From Octopus sinensis (lineage: Eukaryota), in NCBI RefSeq assembly GCF_006345805.1, contig NW_021829884.1, forward strand, positions 1 to 33,086: a DNA stretch of 33,086 bases, written 5' to 3'. Shown here in pieces: positions 2,747 through 32,104 of the stretch. The notes beneath the pieces are model-generated. The model saw nothing but the letters and a program-made list of their open reading frames with translations, searched no databases and was not told the DNA's origin. Position 1 is the first letter of the stretch. The number at the start of each line of letters is the position of its first letter. The position numbers were made by a program, and so were the translations under genes.

Positions 2747-2818
2747 AGATATGTGAAACTGGACAGATTTCGGAAGGTGTCTACTTTGATTTCTTTGATG
2801 TCATTATAACTCAAATAT
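2747..2818 (-). CDS. LRR exon [24 protein letters not shown]
   Basis: 72 nt, ttttatgtttcag acceptor; weaker donor gtcagc. Confidence 0.85.
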
Positions 2819-29800: not shown

Positions 29801-32104
29801 CGAGGGAGAAGAAGAAGAAGAAGAAGAAGAAAAAGAAGAGAATGAAGGAGAAGAGGAGCAACAAGTAGGAGATACTTCCAGAGAAGGAAACAAACACTAG
29901 TTGAGCGAAGTCCCTAAATGGAAAAAATGCATGAAGGACACCATCCAAGCACCTCCCCACAACACATACACACAACTATCTACTATAACACCAACATTAC
30001 CAACACCACCAGTACCGCTGCCAGCACCACCCGCCATACAAATATCCCCTTCGAAATCACCTTCGTAAATTTCCCTGCAATCCACATATTGAAGGGGGGG
30101 AGGAGGAGGAGGCGAGGGAGAAGAATAAGAAGAAGAAGAAGAAAAAGAAGAGAATGAAGGAGAAGAGGAGCAACAAGTAGGAGATACTTCCAGAGAAGGA
30201 AACAAACACTAGTTGAGCGAAGTCCCTAAATGGAAAAAATGCATGAAAGACAACATCCAAGTACCTCCCCACAACACATACACACAACTATCTACTATAA
30301 CACCAACATTACCAACACCACCAGTATCGCTGCCAGCACCACCCGCCATACAAATATCCCCTTCGAAATCACCTTCGTAAATTTCCCTGCATCCACATAT
30401 TGAAGGGGGGGAGGAGGAGGAGGCGAGGGAGAAGAATTAGAAGAAGAAGAAGAAAAAGAAGAGAATGAAGGAGAAGAGGAGCAACAAGTAGGAGAGATTT
30501 TGGGAAGTGTTTTCGTTGATTGCTTGGATATCGTTATAACTCAAATCCCTGGTGAATAAAATTAAGTCAAGAAGAACATTTATGGTAAGGAAAAGAAAAA
30601 GATGATGGAGAAGAAGTAGATATGATGATGATGAAGAAGAAGAAGAAGAAGAAGAAGAAGAAGAAGAAAAAGGAGAAGGAGAAGAAGAAACAGAAGAACG
30701 AGAAGAGGAAAAAGAATAAGGAGAAGAAAAAAGAACAACAAGAAGAAGAATAACAAGAAGAAGACGAAAATGAAGAACAGGGTGGAGGAGAAGGAGGACG
30801 AGGATAGGAGTCAGAAGAAGTACAAAAAGAAAAAGTGAATAAGTACAAGAAGTAGACGAAGAAGACAAAAAGAAGAAGAAGAAGAAGAAGGAAAATAATA
30901 ATAATAATAAGAAGAAGAAGAAGGAGAAGAGGGAAGATGCAGAAGGAGAAGAAGATGGAGACGAAGAAGAAGAATACGAAGAAGGGGAACAATGCAACAA
31001 GTAGAAGATATATTTAGAAAATTGCGTATGAAACATCTGGGTCGAAATACAGAAATTGAAATGTTATTCAAGGCAGTTACTCGGTAACTAAATCTAAAGG
31101 TAAACTCCGTACATATTATACACACATGATAACACACTCGTCCATAAACAGATGATGTTGAAGAAGAAAGTCAACATGGAGAACAACACAAAAACAATTA
31201 CAGGATCAGGAAATGAAAAGTGAAAACTGAAAGATGTTACGAAGAAAAAGAAGAAGAAAAGCAGAGGAAGAAGTATTGCAATAAATTAAGAAGTAGAACT
31301 AGGAGATAAGGAAGATGTTAAAGGAGATGAAGGAGAAGAAAAAGAAGGAGAAGAAGAGCAACAAGTAGGAGATACTTCCAGAGAGGGGAAACAAATACTA
31401 GTTGAGCGAAGTCCCTAAATGGAAAAAATGCATGAAGGACACCATCCAAGCACCTCCCCACAACACATACACACAACTATCTACTATAATACCAACATTA
31501 TCAACACCACCAATACCGCTGCCAGCACCACCCGCACCACACACCATACAAATATCCCCTTCGAAATCACCTTCGTAAATTTCCCTGCAATCCACATATT
31601 GAACCCCTAATGAAATACATACATAAAACTACAAATATGTGTTACTATATATGCTACCATATATGTATGCAAAAGTAAGTTTCCACTAACATTTTCCCAT
31701 CAATTGCTATTCACTCATAAATCCGAAAACTCATAAATATGCCCTCACTCATATTCACAAACGTTGGCAAACAATACCTCGCCCTTTGGACAGACAATGG
31801 TTGTAGACATACACAGAGACGTACACATTCATTCACTAAATTGTTCCCCGCAAGTATCACTCAGTCATATGTACCATATTAAGGAAATGGGCCCACACTC
31901 ACAGATTTATATACATGATAACACATCTTTGGAAAGACGGTGAGGTTGCTTCAAATGAAGTATTGGAAGACATTACATTTATAGAAATATATCGTCAATG
32001 TCATAATAAAAATAAACACTGATTCAACTTACAGACTTGTTAAACTGGACAGATTTCGGAAGGTGTCTGGTTTGAGTTCTTTGATATCATTAGAACTCAA
32101 AGAT
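2747..32104 (-). CDS. Multi-exon leucine-rich-repeat gene, internal portion only (10 intact 72-nt LRR exons; both ends lie outside the window)
   Basis: Ten 72-nt segments on the minus strand, each preceded by a pyrimidine tract + CAG and followed by GTAAGT (nine) or GTCAGC (one). Each translates as 1 nt + 23 codons + CT. Every junction codon is CTA/CTG (Leu), so the joined frame gives xLxxNxIxxIxxxTFxNLxxLxxL repeats with no stop. Confidence 0.9.
2968..4521 (-). mobile_element. Penelope-like retroelement remnant (RT thumb + C-terminal GIY-YIG half) flanked by inverted pseudo-LTR copies
   Basis: ORF 4182-3451 has [26 protein letters not shown] shifted frame continues [40 protein letters not shown]. 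Segments 2968-3194 and 4189-4395 are reverse complements. Confidence 0.8.
4391..4476 (+). ncRNA. Type I hammerhead ribozyme in Penelope pseudo-LTR
   Basis: Stem I ACTTTC/GAAAGT; CTGAAGA 4397-4403; stem II GAAACTT/AATTTTC (one mismatch) enclosing a long hairpin; GAAA 4459-4462; AC-ATGT-GT stem III; GUC cleavage after C4470. Confidence 0.75.
4806..4877 (-). CDS. LRR exon [24 protein letters not shown]
   Basis: 72 nt, tttattttacag / gtaagt. Confidence 0.9.
4990..5605. repeat. (GAT)n-derived and (GAA)n low-complexity intron sequence
   Basis: Direct inspection; similar tracts at 6160-6830, 9930-10170, 10750-11300. Confidence 0.9.
5978..6049 (-). CDS. LRR exon [24 protein letters not shown]
   Basis: 72 nt, ttttatgttccag / gtaagt. 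Confidence 0.9.
6918..9562 (-). mobile_element. Charlie/SPIN-like hAT DNA transposon, internally deleted, both ends present
   Basis: TIRs CAGTGTCCCTTAACCT (6918-6933) and reverse complement CAGTGGTTCTTAACTT (9547-9562), 12/16 match. TSD ATCTAGAG (6910-6917) / ATCTCGAG (9563-9570). Transposase remnants: BED finger [43 protein letters not shown], and dimerization motif [26 protein letters not shown]. Confidence 0.9.
10551..10622 (-). CDS. LRR exon [24 protein letters not shown]
   Basis: 72 nt, ttttatgttccag / gtaagt. Confidence 0.9.
11300..12300. repeat. About 1 kb near-pure polypurine (GAA/GGA)n tract
   Basis: Direct inspection; comparable tracts at 27210-27620, 28140-28880, 29400-29860, 30400-31010. 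Confidence 0.95.
12705..12776 (-). CDS. LRR exon [24 protein letters not shown]
   Basis: 72 nt, ttttattctccag / gtaagt. Confidence 0.9.
13009..13054 (-). pseudogene. 3'-truncated LRR exon [15 protein letters not shown] (46 nt; duplicate of 29593-29638)
   Basis: Acceptor ttttattttccag intact; no donor; fused to CCT/CTT repeats. Confidence 0.8.
13294..14170 (+). mobile_element. R4/Dong-clade LINE 3' fragment (CCHC knuckle + RLE) with (AAT)n tail to 14253
   Basis: [75 protein letters not shown]; stops and a frameshift. Confidence 0.9.
15097..15130 (-). ncRNA. Degenerate minimal hammerhead-like motif (probably inactive) in a Penelope-type pseudo-LTR remnant
   Basis: TTT-CTGTTGA-A-GAGC-ATGG-GCGC-GAAAT-GTA-AAA; same layout as 1626-1661 but with a core A>T change and a stem II mismatch. 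Confidence 0.4.
15211..16964 (+). mobile_element. Probable non-autonomous Helitron
   Basis: Starts A|TCTATATATTTAAAACTGAG followed by (CTGT)n; ends with hairpin GACCCGGAAACTCCGGGTC then CTAG|T; inserted in an AT context with no TSD; internal 144-bp tandem duplication at 15267-15550. Pairing of the two ends is inferred. Confidence 0.55.
17819..17890 (-). CDS. LRR exon [24 protein letters not shown]
   Basis: 72 nt, ttttattttacag / gtaagt. Confidence 0.9.
18057..18530 (+). mobile_element. R4/Dong-clade LINE 3' fragment (same family as 13294-14170)
   Basis: [51 protein letters not shown]; same 3' UTR (gagcatcacaac..cccaaggcacac). Confidence 0.9.
18835..19968 (+). mobile_element. R4/Dong-clade LINE fragment of a different subfamily, between (AAT)n tracts
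   Basis: [26 protein letters not shown]; [35 protein letters not shown]; IWDF..NRKLDIV..IIDIACP..ERYDRL. Confidence 0.85.
20000..20250 (+). mobile_element. Possible 3' end of a LINE/SINE with (AAT)n tail
   Basis: GC-richer island ending ctctctcaagcagt directly before an (AAT)n run; family not established. Confidence 0.4.
20439..20978 (-). mobile_element. R4/Dong-clade LINE 3' fragment (same family as 1-1570), embedded in (TAA)n
   Basis: Reverse complement reads [53 protein letters not shown]; similar to 1210-1550; (AAT)n on both sides. Confidence 0.9.
21385..22078 (+). mobile_element. Tx1/L1-clade LINE ORF2 3' fragment (zinc-binding RVT-type C-terminus) with (AAT)n tail
   Basis: [51 protein letters not shown]; frameshifts; GC-richer than flanks. 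Confidence 0.7.
22451..23790 (+). mobile_element. Penelope-like retroelement, 5'-truncated (RT thumb, Cys-rich linker, GIY-YIG endonuclease), between (AT)n tracts
   Basis: [35 protein letters not shown]; CGRSNCGTC; [33 protein letters not shown]; E.FFINKF.PQLN. Confidence 0.9.
23991..24311 (-). mobile_element. Solo pseudo-LTR of the Penelope-like family seen at 2968-4521
   Basis: Reverse complement of about 4218-4525; near-direct copy of 2968-3160. Confidence 0.85.
24039..24124 (-). ncRNA. Type I hammerhead ribozyme, best-paired copy
   Basis: ACTTTC/GAAAGT stem I; CTGAAGA; perfect 7-bp stem II GAAAATT/AATTTTC; GAAAC-ATGT-GTC; cleavage after C at 24045. Confidence 0.8.
24316..26120 (-). mobile_element. 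Duplicated, end-less copy of the hAT element (matches 7545-9323)
   Basis: Near-identical to 7545-9323, sharing most of the same disabling lesions; lacks both outer TIRs. Confidence 0.9.
26463..26534 (-). CDS. LRR exon [24 protein letters not shown]
   Basis: 72 nt, ttttatgttccag / gtaagt. Confidence 0.9.
28027..28098 (-). CDS. LRR exon [24 protein letters not shown]
   Basis: 72 nt, ttttattctccag / gtaagt. Confidence 0.9.
29284..29355 (-). CDS. LRR exon [24 protein letters not shown]
   Basis: 72 nt, ttttattctccag / gtaagt. Confidence 0.9.
29593..29638 (-). pseudogene. 3'-truncated LRR exon [15 protein letters not shown] (46 nt; acceptor intact, donor lost)
   Basis: Acceptor ttttaatttccag, then runs into CTT/CCT repeats. 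Confidence 0.8.
29860..30495. repeat. Tandem repeat of about 310 bp containing a ~230-bp non-microsatellite unit whose source copy is at 31366-31603
   Basis: Unit gagcaacaagtaggagatacttcc...ccacatattgaa at ~29860-30093, ~30170-30404 and 31366-31603. Confidence 0.85.
30491..30548 (-). pseudogene. 3'-truncated LRR exon [19 protein letters not shown] (58 nt; acceptor intact, donor lost)
   Basis: Acceptor ttttattcaccag present; exon breaks into a CTT-rich repeat; conserved Phe changed to Ser (TCC). Confidence 0.8.
32033..32104 (-). CDS. LRR exon [24 protein letters not shown]
   Basis: 72 nt, acceptor ttttatgttccag, donor gtaagt. Confidence 0.9.

What the first reader, a model, noticed from the sequence alone, without database searches (positions are those of the whole stretch)
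2747..32104. Hidden array of interchangeable 72-nt LRR cassette exons: candidate variable LRR recognition gene
Seen: ten intact 72-nt exons missed by the ORF track, each exactly one LRR, all phase 2-2, all joining through a Leu codon. Any subset spliced together stays in frame. L6, N9, T18, F19 and L22 are invariant, whereas x5 (S,Y,F,D,N,V), x7 (S,E,N,K,W,D), x8 (S,H,Y,D,G,E,N) and x10 (D,H,N,K) vary. Several N-x-S/T sequons (NLS, NET, NLT) suggest an extracellular protein. Known: one-LRR-per-exon phase-2 structure occurs in LGR/GRL101-type GPCRs and other secreted or cell-surface LRR proteins; x2, x3, x5, x7, x8 and x10 form the concave ligand face and are the variable sites in jawless-fish VLRs. 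Inference: an invertebrate LRR solenoid that diversifies by exon duplication and possibly combinatorial exon skipping.
Basis: partly seen in the sequence, partly recalled or inferred. Interest (0 to 1): 0.88.

Follow-up and report, generated by a model that had tools for sequence, protein, structure and literature searches.

The report
Octopus gene with duplicated single-LRR exons
The window holds the middle of an octopus gene for a probably secreted or cell-surface leucine-rich-repeat protein, built from at least ten one-repeat exons that have recently multiplied and diverged at the predicted ligand-binding positions; this is an interesting but not unprecedented gene design, and any role as a "variable receptor" is still unproven.

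Summary
Ten 72-nt exons lie on the minus strand at exactly the stated coordinates. Each has an AG acceptor and a GT donor (nine are GTAAGT) and is phase 2-2, with a CT|A/G Leu junction. Spliced together they give a 239-aa product that Pfam and AlphaFold2 read as a regular LRR solenoid.

First, the exons are not independent: a ~16-kb segmental duplication, a 1.26-kb duplication and older duplications generated them. Second, three further copies are truncated pseudo-exons. Third, an Octopus sinensis contig that is 97-99% identical (flanks sampled around two exons are base-identical) supplies the gene's 5' end (signal peptide + LRRNT), plus three NCBI isoforms that each differ by one 24-aa cassette.

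O. bimaculoides has the same N-terminal exon followed by eight such exons, without one-to-one exon orthology.

Young exon duplicates differ more than their flanking introns (13/144 vs 33/1458). Twelve of the 13 changes are nonsynonymous, and nine of those twelve fall on concave-face positions.

So "diversifies by exon duplication" is supported. Cassette skipping is supported only by predicted isoforms. A combinatorial recognition repertoire, immune function and the C-terminal architecture remain untested.

One-LRR-per-exon modularity with cassette skipping is already known (Slit, LGR, NLR). Verdict: a new member of a known kind, of moderate interest.

The parts
32033..32104 (-). LRR exon E1 ([23 protein letters not shown]), 72 nt, phase 2-2, AG/GTAAGT
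   Evidence: The encoded residues are identical to exon 31972-32043 of O. sinensis contig L001, and the sampled flanks are base-identical (0/498).
30491..30548 (-). Pseudo-exon r1 ([15 protein letters not shown]...). The acceptor is kept; the last ~14 nt and the donor are replaced by CT-rich low complexity.
   Evidence: nhmmer E=3e-13, model positions 1-58 only. Sequence shown.
29593..29638 (-). Pseudo-exon r2 ([15 protein letters not shown]...), truncated after ~46 nt. An intact copy of this exon type exists in L001 at 17471-17542.
29284..29355 (-). LRR exon E2 ([23 protein letters not shown])
   Evidence: It differs from the L001 counterpart by 3 nt, all nonsynonymous.
28027..28098 (-). LRR exon E3 ([23 protein letters not shown]), a 1257-bp tandem duplicate of the E2 unit
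   Evidence: Identical to L001 36018-36089.
26463..26534 (-). LRR exon E4 ([23 protein letters not shown])
   Evidence: 97% identical to E7; the two differences are at x5 and x7.
17819..17890 (-). LRR exon E5 ([23 protein letters not shown])
   Evidence: Its ~9.2-kb unit (13294-22450) is 99% identical to L001 21929-31130.
13008..13054 (-). Pseudo-exon r3 ([15 protein letters not shown]...), truncated; paralogue of r2
12705..12776 (-). LRR exon E6 ([23 protein letters not shown]), paralogue of E2/E3
10551..10622 (-). LRR exon E7 ([23 protein letters not shown]), paralogue of E4
5978..6049 (-). LRR exon E8 ([23 protein letters not shown]), an older relative of E4/E7 (75% over ~600 bp)
4806..4877 (-). 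LRR exon E9 ([23 protein letters not shown])
2747..2818 (-). LRR exon E10 ([23 protein letters not shown]). It has a weak GTCAGC donor and F instead of L at repeat position 1. It is an older relative of E1 (88%).
24316..29880 (-). Copy A of the multi-exon segmental duplication (contains r2, E2, E3, E4)
   Evidence: blastn self-comparison: 24316-26128 ~ 7545-9330 (96%), 26120-27612 ~ 10208-11733 (94%), 28143-29880 ~ 11562-13296 (89%). Repeat families D4-D13.
7545..13296 (-). Copy B of the segmental duplication (contains r3, E6, E7)
11261..12338 (-). Longest of nine intronic pyrimidine-rich tracts on the gene strand (83-93% C+T; 93% here), between E6 and E7, i.e. upstream of E7. Others at 30562-30989, 29652-29911, 29353-29620, 28091-28917, 27176-27669, 13068-13324, 12774-13038 and 6620-6853.

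Best explanation
The window is the internal LRR-coding part of one long (>50 kb) protein-coding gene of an octopus, either Octopus sinensis or a very close relative. The gene belongs to a small family so far seen only in Octopus.

**Gene structure.** One exon encodes the signal peptide and LRRNT cap. It is followed by a long array of 72-nt exons, each encoding one 24-residue 'typical' extracellular LRR. The array grew by unequal crossing-over that duplicated exon-plus-intron units. The steps were single units with ~200-300-bp ancestral introns, later a 1.26-kb unit, and a ~16-kb multi-exon block. The array also loses units: three are truncated pseudo-exons.

**Splicing.** Every exon is symmetric (phase 2-2, 72 nt, Leu junction). 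Gain, loss or skipping of any unit therefore only lengthens or shortens the solenoid. At least two cassettes are skipped singly in predicted mRNA isoforms.

**Divergence.** After duplication, copies diverge mostly at the beta-strand/concave-face residues (x2, x3, x5, x7, x8, x10) that bind ligand in LRR proteins.

**Shown:** exon anatomy, duplication history, the solenoid fold, the N-terminal cap in the sister contig, lack of one-to-one exon orthology with O. bimaculoides, and excess concave-face nonsynonymous change.

**Inferred:** that the window and the L001 5' exons are the same gene, that the protein is secreted or on the cell surface, that concave-face divergence reflects selection for new binding specificities, and that cassette skipping is biologically used.

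**Unknown:** the C-terminal architecture, the ligand, and the tissue.
For: - **Exons and splice sites:**
- **LRR identity:** Pfam LRR_8 E=2e-127; AF2 pLDDT 90.2, pTM 0.89, one strand per 24 residues; Foldseek TM 0.92-0.94 to LRRTM2, LRIG1 and LGR5 ectodomains.
- **Duplication map:**
- **O. sinensis contig L001 (VCDQ01005429.1):**
  - 99% identical over 9.2 kb and 97% over 2.7 kb to the window, with sampled exon flanks base-identical.
  - Carries the SP+LRRNT exon, then NLAEN, YLNGN, SLSSN (=E1), YLSHN (~E2) and FLSYN (=E3).
  - NCBI isoforms XP_029657302.2, XP_036355967.1 and XP_036355968.1 differ by one cassette each.
- **O. bimaculoides locus L002:** the same N-terminal exon (69% identity) plus eight 72-nt AG/GTAAGT LRR exons. 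The best cross-species exon matches are not one-to-one.
- **Young duplicates:**
  - 13 changes in 144 exon nt vs 33 in 1458 flanking nt (Fisher p=1e-4).
  - 12 of 13 are nonsynonymous, and 9 of those 12 fall on concave-face codons (binomial p=4e-4 against 6/24, 0.015 against 6/15).
  - Concave dN is 0.13-0.33 against flank divergence of 0.01-0.05.
- **Sequons:** twelve N-x-S/T sequons.
Against: - No transcript reads could be examined. The isoforms are NCBI models, and all of them (and the O. bimaculoides models) end at the in-frame TAA created by the CT|GTAAGT donor. The annotation of this family is therefore fragmentary and could be unreliable.
- The window and L001 differ in arrangement and are only 88-97% identical in repeat-rich parts. 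Identity of the two loci is inferred.
- The selection signal rests on about 13 substitutions. Short gene-conversion patches from other exon copies could produce it: there is a four-gamete violation between nt 17 and nt 65. dN/dS alone (12:1 against a neutral ~4:1) is not significant.
- Older duplicates show dN about equal to dS and to intron divergence (E8/E7) or overall purifying selection (E1/E10).
- No C-terminal exon, LRRCT, TM or GPI signal was found in the window.
Confidence: 0.6

Rival explanations
1. This is an ordinary, constitutively spliced LRR gene. All intact exons are always included. The array simply drifted in length by unequal crossing-over, as in many LRR genes. The predicted isoforms are splicing noise or annotation artefacts. 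Concave-face differences reflect relaxed constraint or gene conversion, not selection for diversity.
For: - One-LRR-per-exon modular structure is common and usually constitutive (Slit and NLR modularity discussed in PMC6642158).
- All splice sites are near-identical strong consensus sites, which favours inclusion.
- NCBI models of this family are visibly truncated.
- dN/dS on its own is not significantly above 1.
- x positions vary between repeats in every LRR protein.
Against: - Three separate isoform models skip exactly one cassette each.
- Exon change exceeds intron change 4-fold in young duplicates and is concentrated on 6 of 24 positions.
- There is no one-to-one exon orthology between Octopus species.
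Confidence: 0.28
2. Part of the array is an assembly artefact. Haplotypes or collapsed and expanded repeats were mis-joined, so the true gene has fewer exons (for example E6/E7 are the other allele of E2-E4).
For: - The independent O. sinensis contig L001 has a different order (the YLNGN unit lies before the SLSSN unit) and a 99%-identical 9.2-kb block.
- The region is full of low-complexity tracts and TE fragments that hamper assembly.
Against: - The two duplicated blocks are only 89-96% identical. They differ structurally (E3 is extra, an E1 equivalent is absent) and differ by nonsynonymous exon changes. That is more than expected between alleles.
- L001 confirms the E1-r-r-E2-E3 order independently.
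- The L001 order is compatible with a higher-order tandem repeat continuing upstream of the window.
Confidence: 0.08
3. It is the ectodomain part of a conserved LGR-type GPCR or of a Slit/Slitrk-type guidance gene, with a fixed function and an ordinary ortholog in other molluscs.
For: - The exon design (72 nt, one LRR per exon) is that of Slit and LGR ectodomains (own knowledge; Slit modularity cited in PMC6642158).
- LGR4/5 are among the best structural matches.
- A related O. sinensis protein is named SLITRK4-like by NCBI.
Against: - The signal-peptide/LRRNT exon retrieved only Octopus proteins from 5.8 billion sequences.
- The LRR matches are generic; IGFALS, TLR13, LRRC15 and TLR3 score higher than LGR.
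- Very recent exon gain and loss, and the lack of exon orthology even within Octopus, are unlike conserved LGR or Slit genes.
- No 7TM, EGF or LamG exon was seen, although the window does not reach the gene's 3' end.
Confidence: 0.05
4. It is a somatic-diversification or mutually exclusive system. Either the cassettes are donor modules copied into an incomplete gene (VLR-like), or exactly one of several cassettes is chosen per transcript by competing RNA pairings (Dscam-like).
For: - Partial cassettes without donors exist (r1-r3).
- A mosaic pattern of shared variants among exon copies suggests gene conversion.
- Intron sequence next to each exon is conserved.
Against: - All ten cassettes have canonical acceptors and GT donors, the same orientation and the same phase, so they are exons.
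- Predicted mRNAs contain several cassettes in series.
- RNAalifold finds no conserved pairing in the conserved flanks (0 pairs).
- The conversion signal is germline and weak.
Confidence: 0.02

Closest known systems
Slit genes (and the LRR-exon modularity described for Slit, NLR and LRRC37 families)
   Same: - Extracellular 'typical' 24-residue LRRs behind a CxC-type LRRNT cap.
- LRRs encoded by short, repeated, same-phase exons, so that skipping or duplication stays in frame.
- Alternative splicing of LRR exons proposed or shown (PMC6642158, citing Little et al. 2002).
   Different: - No evidence here for the four-domain Slit layout or for EGF, LamG or CTCK exons.
- The N-terminal exon is found only in Octopus.
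- The array is in active flux: 89-99% identical blocks, pseudo-exons, and no exon orthology between congeners.
LGR-type receptors (LGR4/5/6, glycoprotein-hormone and relaxin receptors, molluscan GRL101)
   Same: - An LRR ectodomain built from short LRR exons.
- Good structural superposition (TM 0.93).
- LRR-exon skipping variants are known (LGR5 delta-5, PMC11678308; soluble Lgr4 ectodomain, PMC4154783).
   Different: - No 7TM or LDLa exon was seen.
- LGR repeat number is conserved across animals, whereas this array differs between close relatives.
Tetrahymena 90-bp-exon LRR genes
   Same: - Tandem arrays of identical-length LRR exons with uniformly phase-2 introns and a split 'junction' codon.
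- Clonal, lineage-specific expansion by unequal crossing-over (PMC6564038).
   Different: - A ciliate, 90-bp exons and a 30-residue repeat, with thousands of genes.
- Here the host is a metazoan, the exons are 72 nt with a 24-residue extracellular-type LRR, the family is small, and the introns are very long and TE-laden.
Lamprey/hagfish variable lymphocyte receptors
   Same: The same LRR class and caps (VLR A/B/C appear among the PDB hits to the O. sinensis protein). In both, variability is concentrated on concave-face residues of 24-residue modules.
   Different: VLR cassettes are spliceless donor fragments copied somatically into an incomplete germline gene. Here the cassettes are normal exons of one germline gene, and no somatic mechanism is indicated.
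Arthropod Dscam1 cassette-exon arrays
   Same: Tandemly duplicated, in-frame interchangeable exons encoding a recognition surface. Duplicates diverge at binding residues.
   Different: Dscam encodes Ig domains and uses mutually exclusive choice governed by docking/selector RNA pairing. Here several cassettes are included in series, and no conserved RNA pairing was found.

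Membership tests
Extracellular 'typical' LRR protein (LRRNT-capped solenoid) | Tandem 24-residue LxxLxLxxNxIxxIxxxxFxxL repeats forming a solenoid | tested here: met
   Pfam LRR_8 E=2e-127 with 9 stretches. AF2 pLDDT 90.2 with one beta-strand every 24 residues. Foldseek TM 0.92-0.94 to LRRTM2, LRIG1 and LGR5.
Extracellular 'typical' LRR protein (LRRNT-capped solenoid) | Signal peptide and Cys-rich LRRNT cap | tested here: inconclusive
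   Both are absent from the window. They are present in exon 1 of the near-identical O. sinensis contig L001 (MFQQLKLTFVLILSMSFSLESHA...CSICSC...IDC; Pfam LRRNT E=4e-4, below the cut-off). That the window continues that gene is inferred from collinearity.
Extracellular 'typical' LRR protein (LRRNT-capped solenoid) | LRRCT cap and membrane anchor or secretion | tested here: not met
   No LRRCT-like or other C-terminal exon was found in the window by tblastn with the related P0010. The gene runs off the window, so this is a limit of the data and not evidence of absence.
Slit | Four LRR domains, each with its own caps, followed by EGF repeats, a laminin-G domain and a cystine knot | not testable with these tools
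   The 3' part of the gene is outside the window and no octopus genome could be walked. No internal LRRCT/LRRNT pair occurs among the ten consecutive LRR exons, which already exceeds the 5-7 LRRs of a single Slit domain (own knowledge).
LGR-type GPCR | Rhodopsin-type 7TM domain after the LRR ectodomain, and a conserved repeat number | not testable with these tools
   The 7TM exon would lie beyond the window. Repeat number is not conserved between O. sinensis-type and O. bimaculoides loci, which argues against membership.
VLR-like somatically assembled receptor | Incomplete germline gene flanked by spliceless partial LRR donor cassettes in both orientations | tested here: not met
   All ten cassettes have AG/GT splice sites, the same strand and the same phase. 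Predicted mRNAs join them by splicing.
Dscam-like mutually exclusive exon cluster | One-of-N exon choice with conserved docking/selector RNA complementarity | tested here: not met
   Isoform models include 3-4 cassettes in series. RNAalifold on 14 exon-plus-flank units predicts 0 conserved pairs.
Alternatively spliced modular LRR gene (cassette skipping) | Symmetric in-frame LRR exons | tested here: met
   All exons are 72 nt and phase 2-2. They end in CT and start with A or G.
Alternatively spliced modular LRR gene (cassette skipping) | Transcripts that differ by whole LRR exons | tested here: inconclusive
   NCBI isoforms X1/X2/X3 (157/133/133 aa) differ by the NLAEN or the YLNGN cassette. 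These are predicted models. No reads were available, and the cassettes concerned lie upstream of the window.

The most novel reading that the evidence does not exclude
Octopuses use this small, lineage-specific gene family as a germline-encoded, splicing-diversified recognition system. A rapidly turning-over array of interchangeable single-LRR exons, under diversifying selection on the concave face, is combinatorially included to give many secreted or surface LRR isoforms of different length and specificity, for immune or neuronal/chemotactile recognition. This would be an LRR counterpart of Dscam-type diversity in a mollusc.
Probability: 0.15. Interest if true: 0.85.

Novelty: new member of a known kind. 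Interest (0 to 1): 0.45.

Why it matters
Cephalopods have complex nervous systems and only innate immunity. No diversified recognition-receptor family has been described for them in the literature searched here.

This LRR gene's binding surface is being remodelled by recent exon duplication, exon loss and concave-face substitution. Its design allows in-frame cassette skipping. That makes it a concrete, testable candidate for such a family.

Even on the conservative reading, it documents three things:
- Current NCBI models of this Octopus family are truncated at intron-derived stop codons.
- The real genes are far longer than annotated.
- It gives a clean metazoan example of LRR-array growth by unequal crossing-over.

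Tried and rejected
1. **Exhaustive HMMER search** of 1.84 billion representatives with the 239-aa product. It gave 119,029 hits dominated by giant multi-LRR proteins. Pfam scans of the closest three gave only generic LRR or bacterial-type architectures, so nothing was learned about family membership.
2. **Finding the gene's C-terminus or paralogous loci.** P0010 (SLITRK4-like, with LRRCT and a Cys-rich tail), P0030 and P0122 are not on record for contig look-up. tblastn of P0010 against the window found only an LRR match.
3. **N-terminal exon as a family probe**. Only four Octopus proteins were returned. This is useful as a sign of lineage restriction, but the word-index search is insensitive.
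4. **Conserved RNA structure in the conserved intron flanks**. None was predicted, so the Dscam-like idea was rejected.
5. **PDB sequence and fold searches**. These gave generic extracellular LRR matches with no family assignment.
6. **Literature searches** for octopus LRR expansions or for this gene name, and for intron phase in 72-bp LRR exons. Nothing specific was found.
7. **A clean gene-conversion tract** explaining the E2 vs L001-YLSHN differences. The candidate donor (NLAEN type) carries an extra difference at nt 34 that was not transferred. Only a four-gamete violation can be claimed.

Full report
**1. The observation**

A six-frame scan for L..N(8)xF..L found ten hits, all on the minus strand and none on the plus strand. 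Reading the DNA around each hit gives ten exons of exactly 72 nt. In transcription order they are 32033-32104, 29284-29355, 28027-28098, 26463-26534, 17819-17890, 12705-12776, 10551-10622, 5978-6049, 4806-4877 and 2747-2818.

- Each exon is preceded by (T)TTTATGTTCCAG-type acceptors.
- The first nine are followed by GTAAGT. The last is followed by GTCAGC.
- Each exon begins with the third base of a split codon (A or G) and ends with CT. Any exon joined to any other therefore makes CTA or CTG (Leu) and stays in frame.
- A DNA profile of the ten exons recovers each at E=1e-14 to 6e-20.
- There are twelve N-x-S/T sequons.

The 239-aa spliced product scores 2e-127 on Pfam LRR_8. As a single sequence it folds with pLDDT 90.2 into a solenoid with one strand per 24 residues. 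It superposes on the LRRTM2, LRIG1 and LGR5 ectodomains at TM 0.92-0.94.

**2.

The ten exons are not ten independent modules.

- Self-comparison shows a multi-exon segmental duplication: 7545-13296 matches 24316-29880 at 89-96%. This makes E6 and E7 the paralogues of E2/E3 and E4.
- A 1257-bp tandem duplication made E2 and E3.
- Older duplications relate E8 to E4/E7 (75% over 600 bp) and E10 to E1 (88% in the exon, about 72% in the flanks).
- The profile also finds three truncated copies: 30491-30548, 29593-29638 and 13008-13054. Each keeps its acceptor but has lost its 3' part and donor to CT-rich low-complexity sequence.
- The introns (1.1-8.6 kb) hold long pyrimidine-rich tracts on the gene strand. 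These explain the strong skews seen. They also hold fragments of non-LTR retrotransposons.

**3. Relatives elsewhere**

*O. sinensis.* The best protein hits are three Octopus sinensis 'leucine-rich repeat-containing protein 4-like' isoforms of 157, 133 and 133 aa. Their contig, VCDQ01005429.1 (L001, 36 kb), is 99.0% identical to window 13294-22450 over 9.2 kb and 97.3% identical to window 30432-33086. The flanks of E1 and E5 are base-for-base identical.

L001 carries:
- a signal-peptide + LRRNT exon (9296-9478);
- an intact NLAEN exon (17471-17542);
- a YLNGN exon (26535-26606, equal to E5);
- then SLSSN (=E1), two DLSYN remnants, one NLAEN remnant, YLSHN (E2 with three nonsynonymous differences) and FLSYN (=E3), before the contig ends.

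The 3' third of L001 is therefore collinear with the 5' sixth of the window. I read L001 as the 5' extension (or an allele, or another assembly) of the same gene. On that reading a YLNGN unit precedes E1 just as E5 precedes E6, which is a higher-order tandem repeat of about 16 kb. This link is an inference, because the overlap is only 88-97% identical in the repeat-rich parts.

*Isoforms.* The three NCBI isoforms differ by exactly one cassette. X2 lacks NLAEN and X3 lacks YLNGN. From my own knowledge, Gnomon normally creates such variants only from transcript evidence. I could not inspect any reads.

All these models, and both O. bimaculoides models, stop four bases after an LRR exon. They stop at the TAA created by CT|GTAAGT. 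The annotated 86-181-aa proteins are therefore almost certainly truncated models of much longer genes.

*O. bimaculoides.* Chromosome CM046629.1 (locus L002) has a homologous SP/LRRNT exon (69% identity) followed by eight 72-nt AG/GTAAGT LRR exons with short introns of 170-2300 bp, and then an assembly gap. Three junction codons there are ATA (Ile) rather than Leu. Each window exon is about equally similar to several O. bimaculoides exons (11-17 of 23 residues), and seven of the ten are closer to another window exon. There is thus no one-to-one exon orthology.

*Family size.* A second paralogue exists in each species (P0030, P0122). Searches with the N-terminal exon found only Octopus proteins.

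**4. Divergence pattern**

For the young duplicates (E2/E3/E6 plus the L001 YLSHN copy, and E4/E7) I aligned the exons with their flanks.
- There are 13 inferred changes in 144 exon positions against 33 in 1458 ungapped flank positions (Fisher p=1e-4).
- Twelve of the 13 exon changes are nonsynonymous.
- Nine of those twelve fall in codons x2, x5, x7, x8 and x10 (binomial p=4e-4 if all 24 positions are equally free, 0.015 if only the 15 non-structural positions are).
- Concave-face dN is 0.13-0.33, whereas structural-position dN is 0 and flank divergence is 0.01-0.05.
- In the AF2 model the strands cover L4-x7, so these positions are on or next to the concave sheet.

Caveats:
- The counts are small.
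- dN/dS alone is not significant.
- Sites 17 and 65 of the exon show all four combinations among close copies. Short gene conversions between cassette types may therefore import several differences at once. That would still diversify the array, but it is not point-mutation selection.
- Older pairs show either neutral-looking divergence (E8/E7) or net constraint (E1/E10: 12% in the exon against 28% in the flanks).

**5. Mechanism**

The best-supported account is an LRR ectodomain gene whose repeat array expands and contracts by unequal crossing-over of exon-intron units. The symmetric phase makes every gain, loss or skip a clean change of solenoid length. New copies then diverge at ligand-contact positions. 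Cassette skipping occurs at least at two positions according to the gene models.

- A VLR-like somatic assembly is not supported: the cassettes are true exons, all in one orientation.
- A Dscam-like mutually exclusive choice is not supported either: mRNA models carry several cassettes in series, and RNAalifold predicts no conserved pairing in the flanks.

**6. Comparison with known systems**

- Same-phase, one-repeat-per-exon LRR genes and LRR-exon skipping are established for Slit, NLR and LRRC37 families (PMC6642158).
- LGR5 (delta-5) and a soluble Lgr4 ectodomain variant are further examples (PMC11678308, PMC4154783).
- Lineage-specific clonal expansion of phase-2 LRR exon arrays is described in Tetrahymena (PMC6564038).
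- Sequence and fold searches place the repeats in the generic extracellular class (IGFALS, TLR13, LRRC15, TLR3, LGR4/5, LRRTM2, LRIG1, NgR, VLR). They cannot assign a family.
- Membership of Slit or LGR cannot be tested without the 3' exons. The Octopus-only N-terminal exon and the unstable repeat number argue against a conserved ortholog.

**7. Verdict**

The feature is real and correctly described. It is plausible but unproven on cassette skipping, and speculative on a 'variable recognition' role. I rate it a new member of a known kind (a modular LRR-exon gene) with an unusually dynamic array. Interest is 0.45. The Dscam-like or LRR-repertoire reading keeps about 15% probability and would be of high interest if long-read cDNA bore it out.

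Noticed in passing
window, ~30 nt upstream and ~130 nt downstream of each of the ten exons (e.g. 31893-32032 and 32105-32139); L002 exon flanks: The intron sequence next to every cassette is as conserved as the exon itself. The downstream consensus is GTAAGTTGAATCAnTCTTCTTTTATAGTATTTCATTGACGATATATTTCTAAATCTGTAATG...CCGTCTTTCCAAAGATG and the upstream consensus is TTCTTCTTAACnCAATTTTATGTTCCAG. Column conservation is 0.80 for both, against 0.27-0.42 further upstream. This holds across all window exons and the eight O. bimaculoides exons. It may be the remnant of a short ancestral intron or a constrained splicing element.
   Followed up: partly
all exon 3' ends in the window; L001 34970-34974; L002 11911-11915 and 19861-19865: Because the exons end in CT and the donor is GTAAGT, failure to splice gives CTG TAA (Leu-stop) immediately. 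Every NCBI model of this family in two species ends this way. The annotated 86-181-aa 'LRRC4-like' proteins therefore look like truncated models (or, less likely, genuine short secreted isoforms from intronic termination).
   Followed up: partly
window 11261-12338, 27176-27669, 28091-28917, 30562-30989 (and five shorter tracts): These are very long tracts with 83-93% C+T on the gene strand, lying in the introns directly upstream of E2, E3, E4 and E7 and of r1-r3. They cause the strong GC and AT skews of the window. They also abut the truncated pseudo-exons, as if low-complexity expansion or recombination had eaten the exon 3' ends. Such tracts could bind PTB-type splicing repressors (speculative).
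   Followed up: partly
window 5-1164 (+), 13482-14073 (+), 18058-18530, 19238-19624 (+); 1205-1585 vs 20586-20973 (inverted, 91%): These are fragments of non-LTR retrotransposons (weak RVT_1 tail and zf-RVT matches) scattered in the introns and downstream of E10, mostly antisense to the gene. Copies of one element lie in inverted orientation about 19 kb apart.
   Followed up: partly
window 1800-2420 (minus-strand reading): A long imperfect (CA)n / CACGCA-type microsatellite region lies about 350 bp downstream of E10, between the last exon seen and the retrotransposon fragment.
   Followed up: no
P0010 (O. sinensis XP_036356231.1, not in the window): This is a related Octopus LRR protein: 49% identical over the LRRs, and its YLNENNIKKIQIGSFDDLRNLKYL repeat resembles E5. 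It continues into an LRRCT-like CxC motif and a ~80-residue ten-Cys segment ending CCxGNLCN, which by eye resembles a Ly6/uPAR three-finger domain (Pfam found nothing). It could indicate the family's C-terminal architecture.
   Followed up: partly
window 29789-30079 vs 30101-30391: A 312-bp tandem duplication at 98% identity lies between r1 and r2. The corresponding L001 region has two DLSYN remnants (33562, 34050) where the window has one. This is a small structural difference between the two sequences.
   Followed up: no
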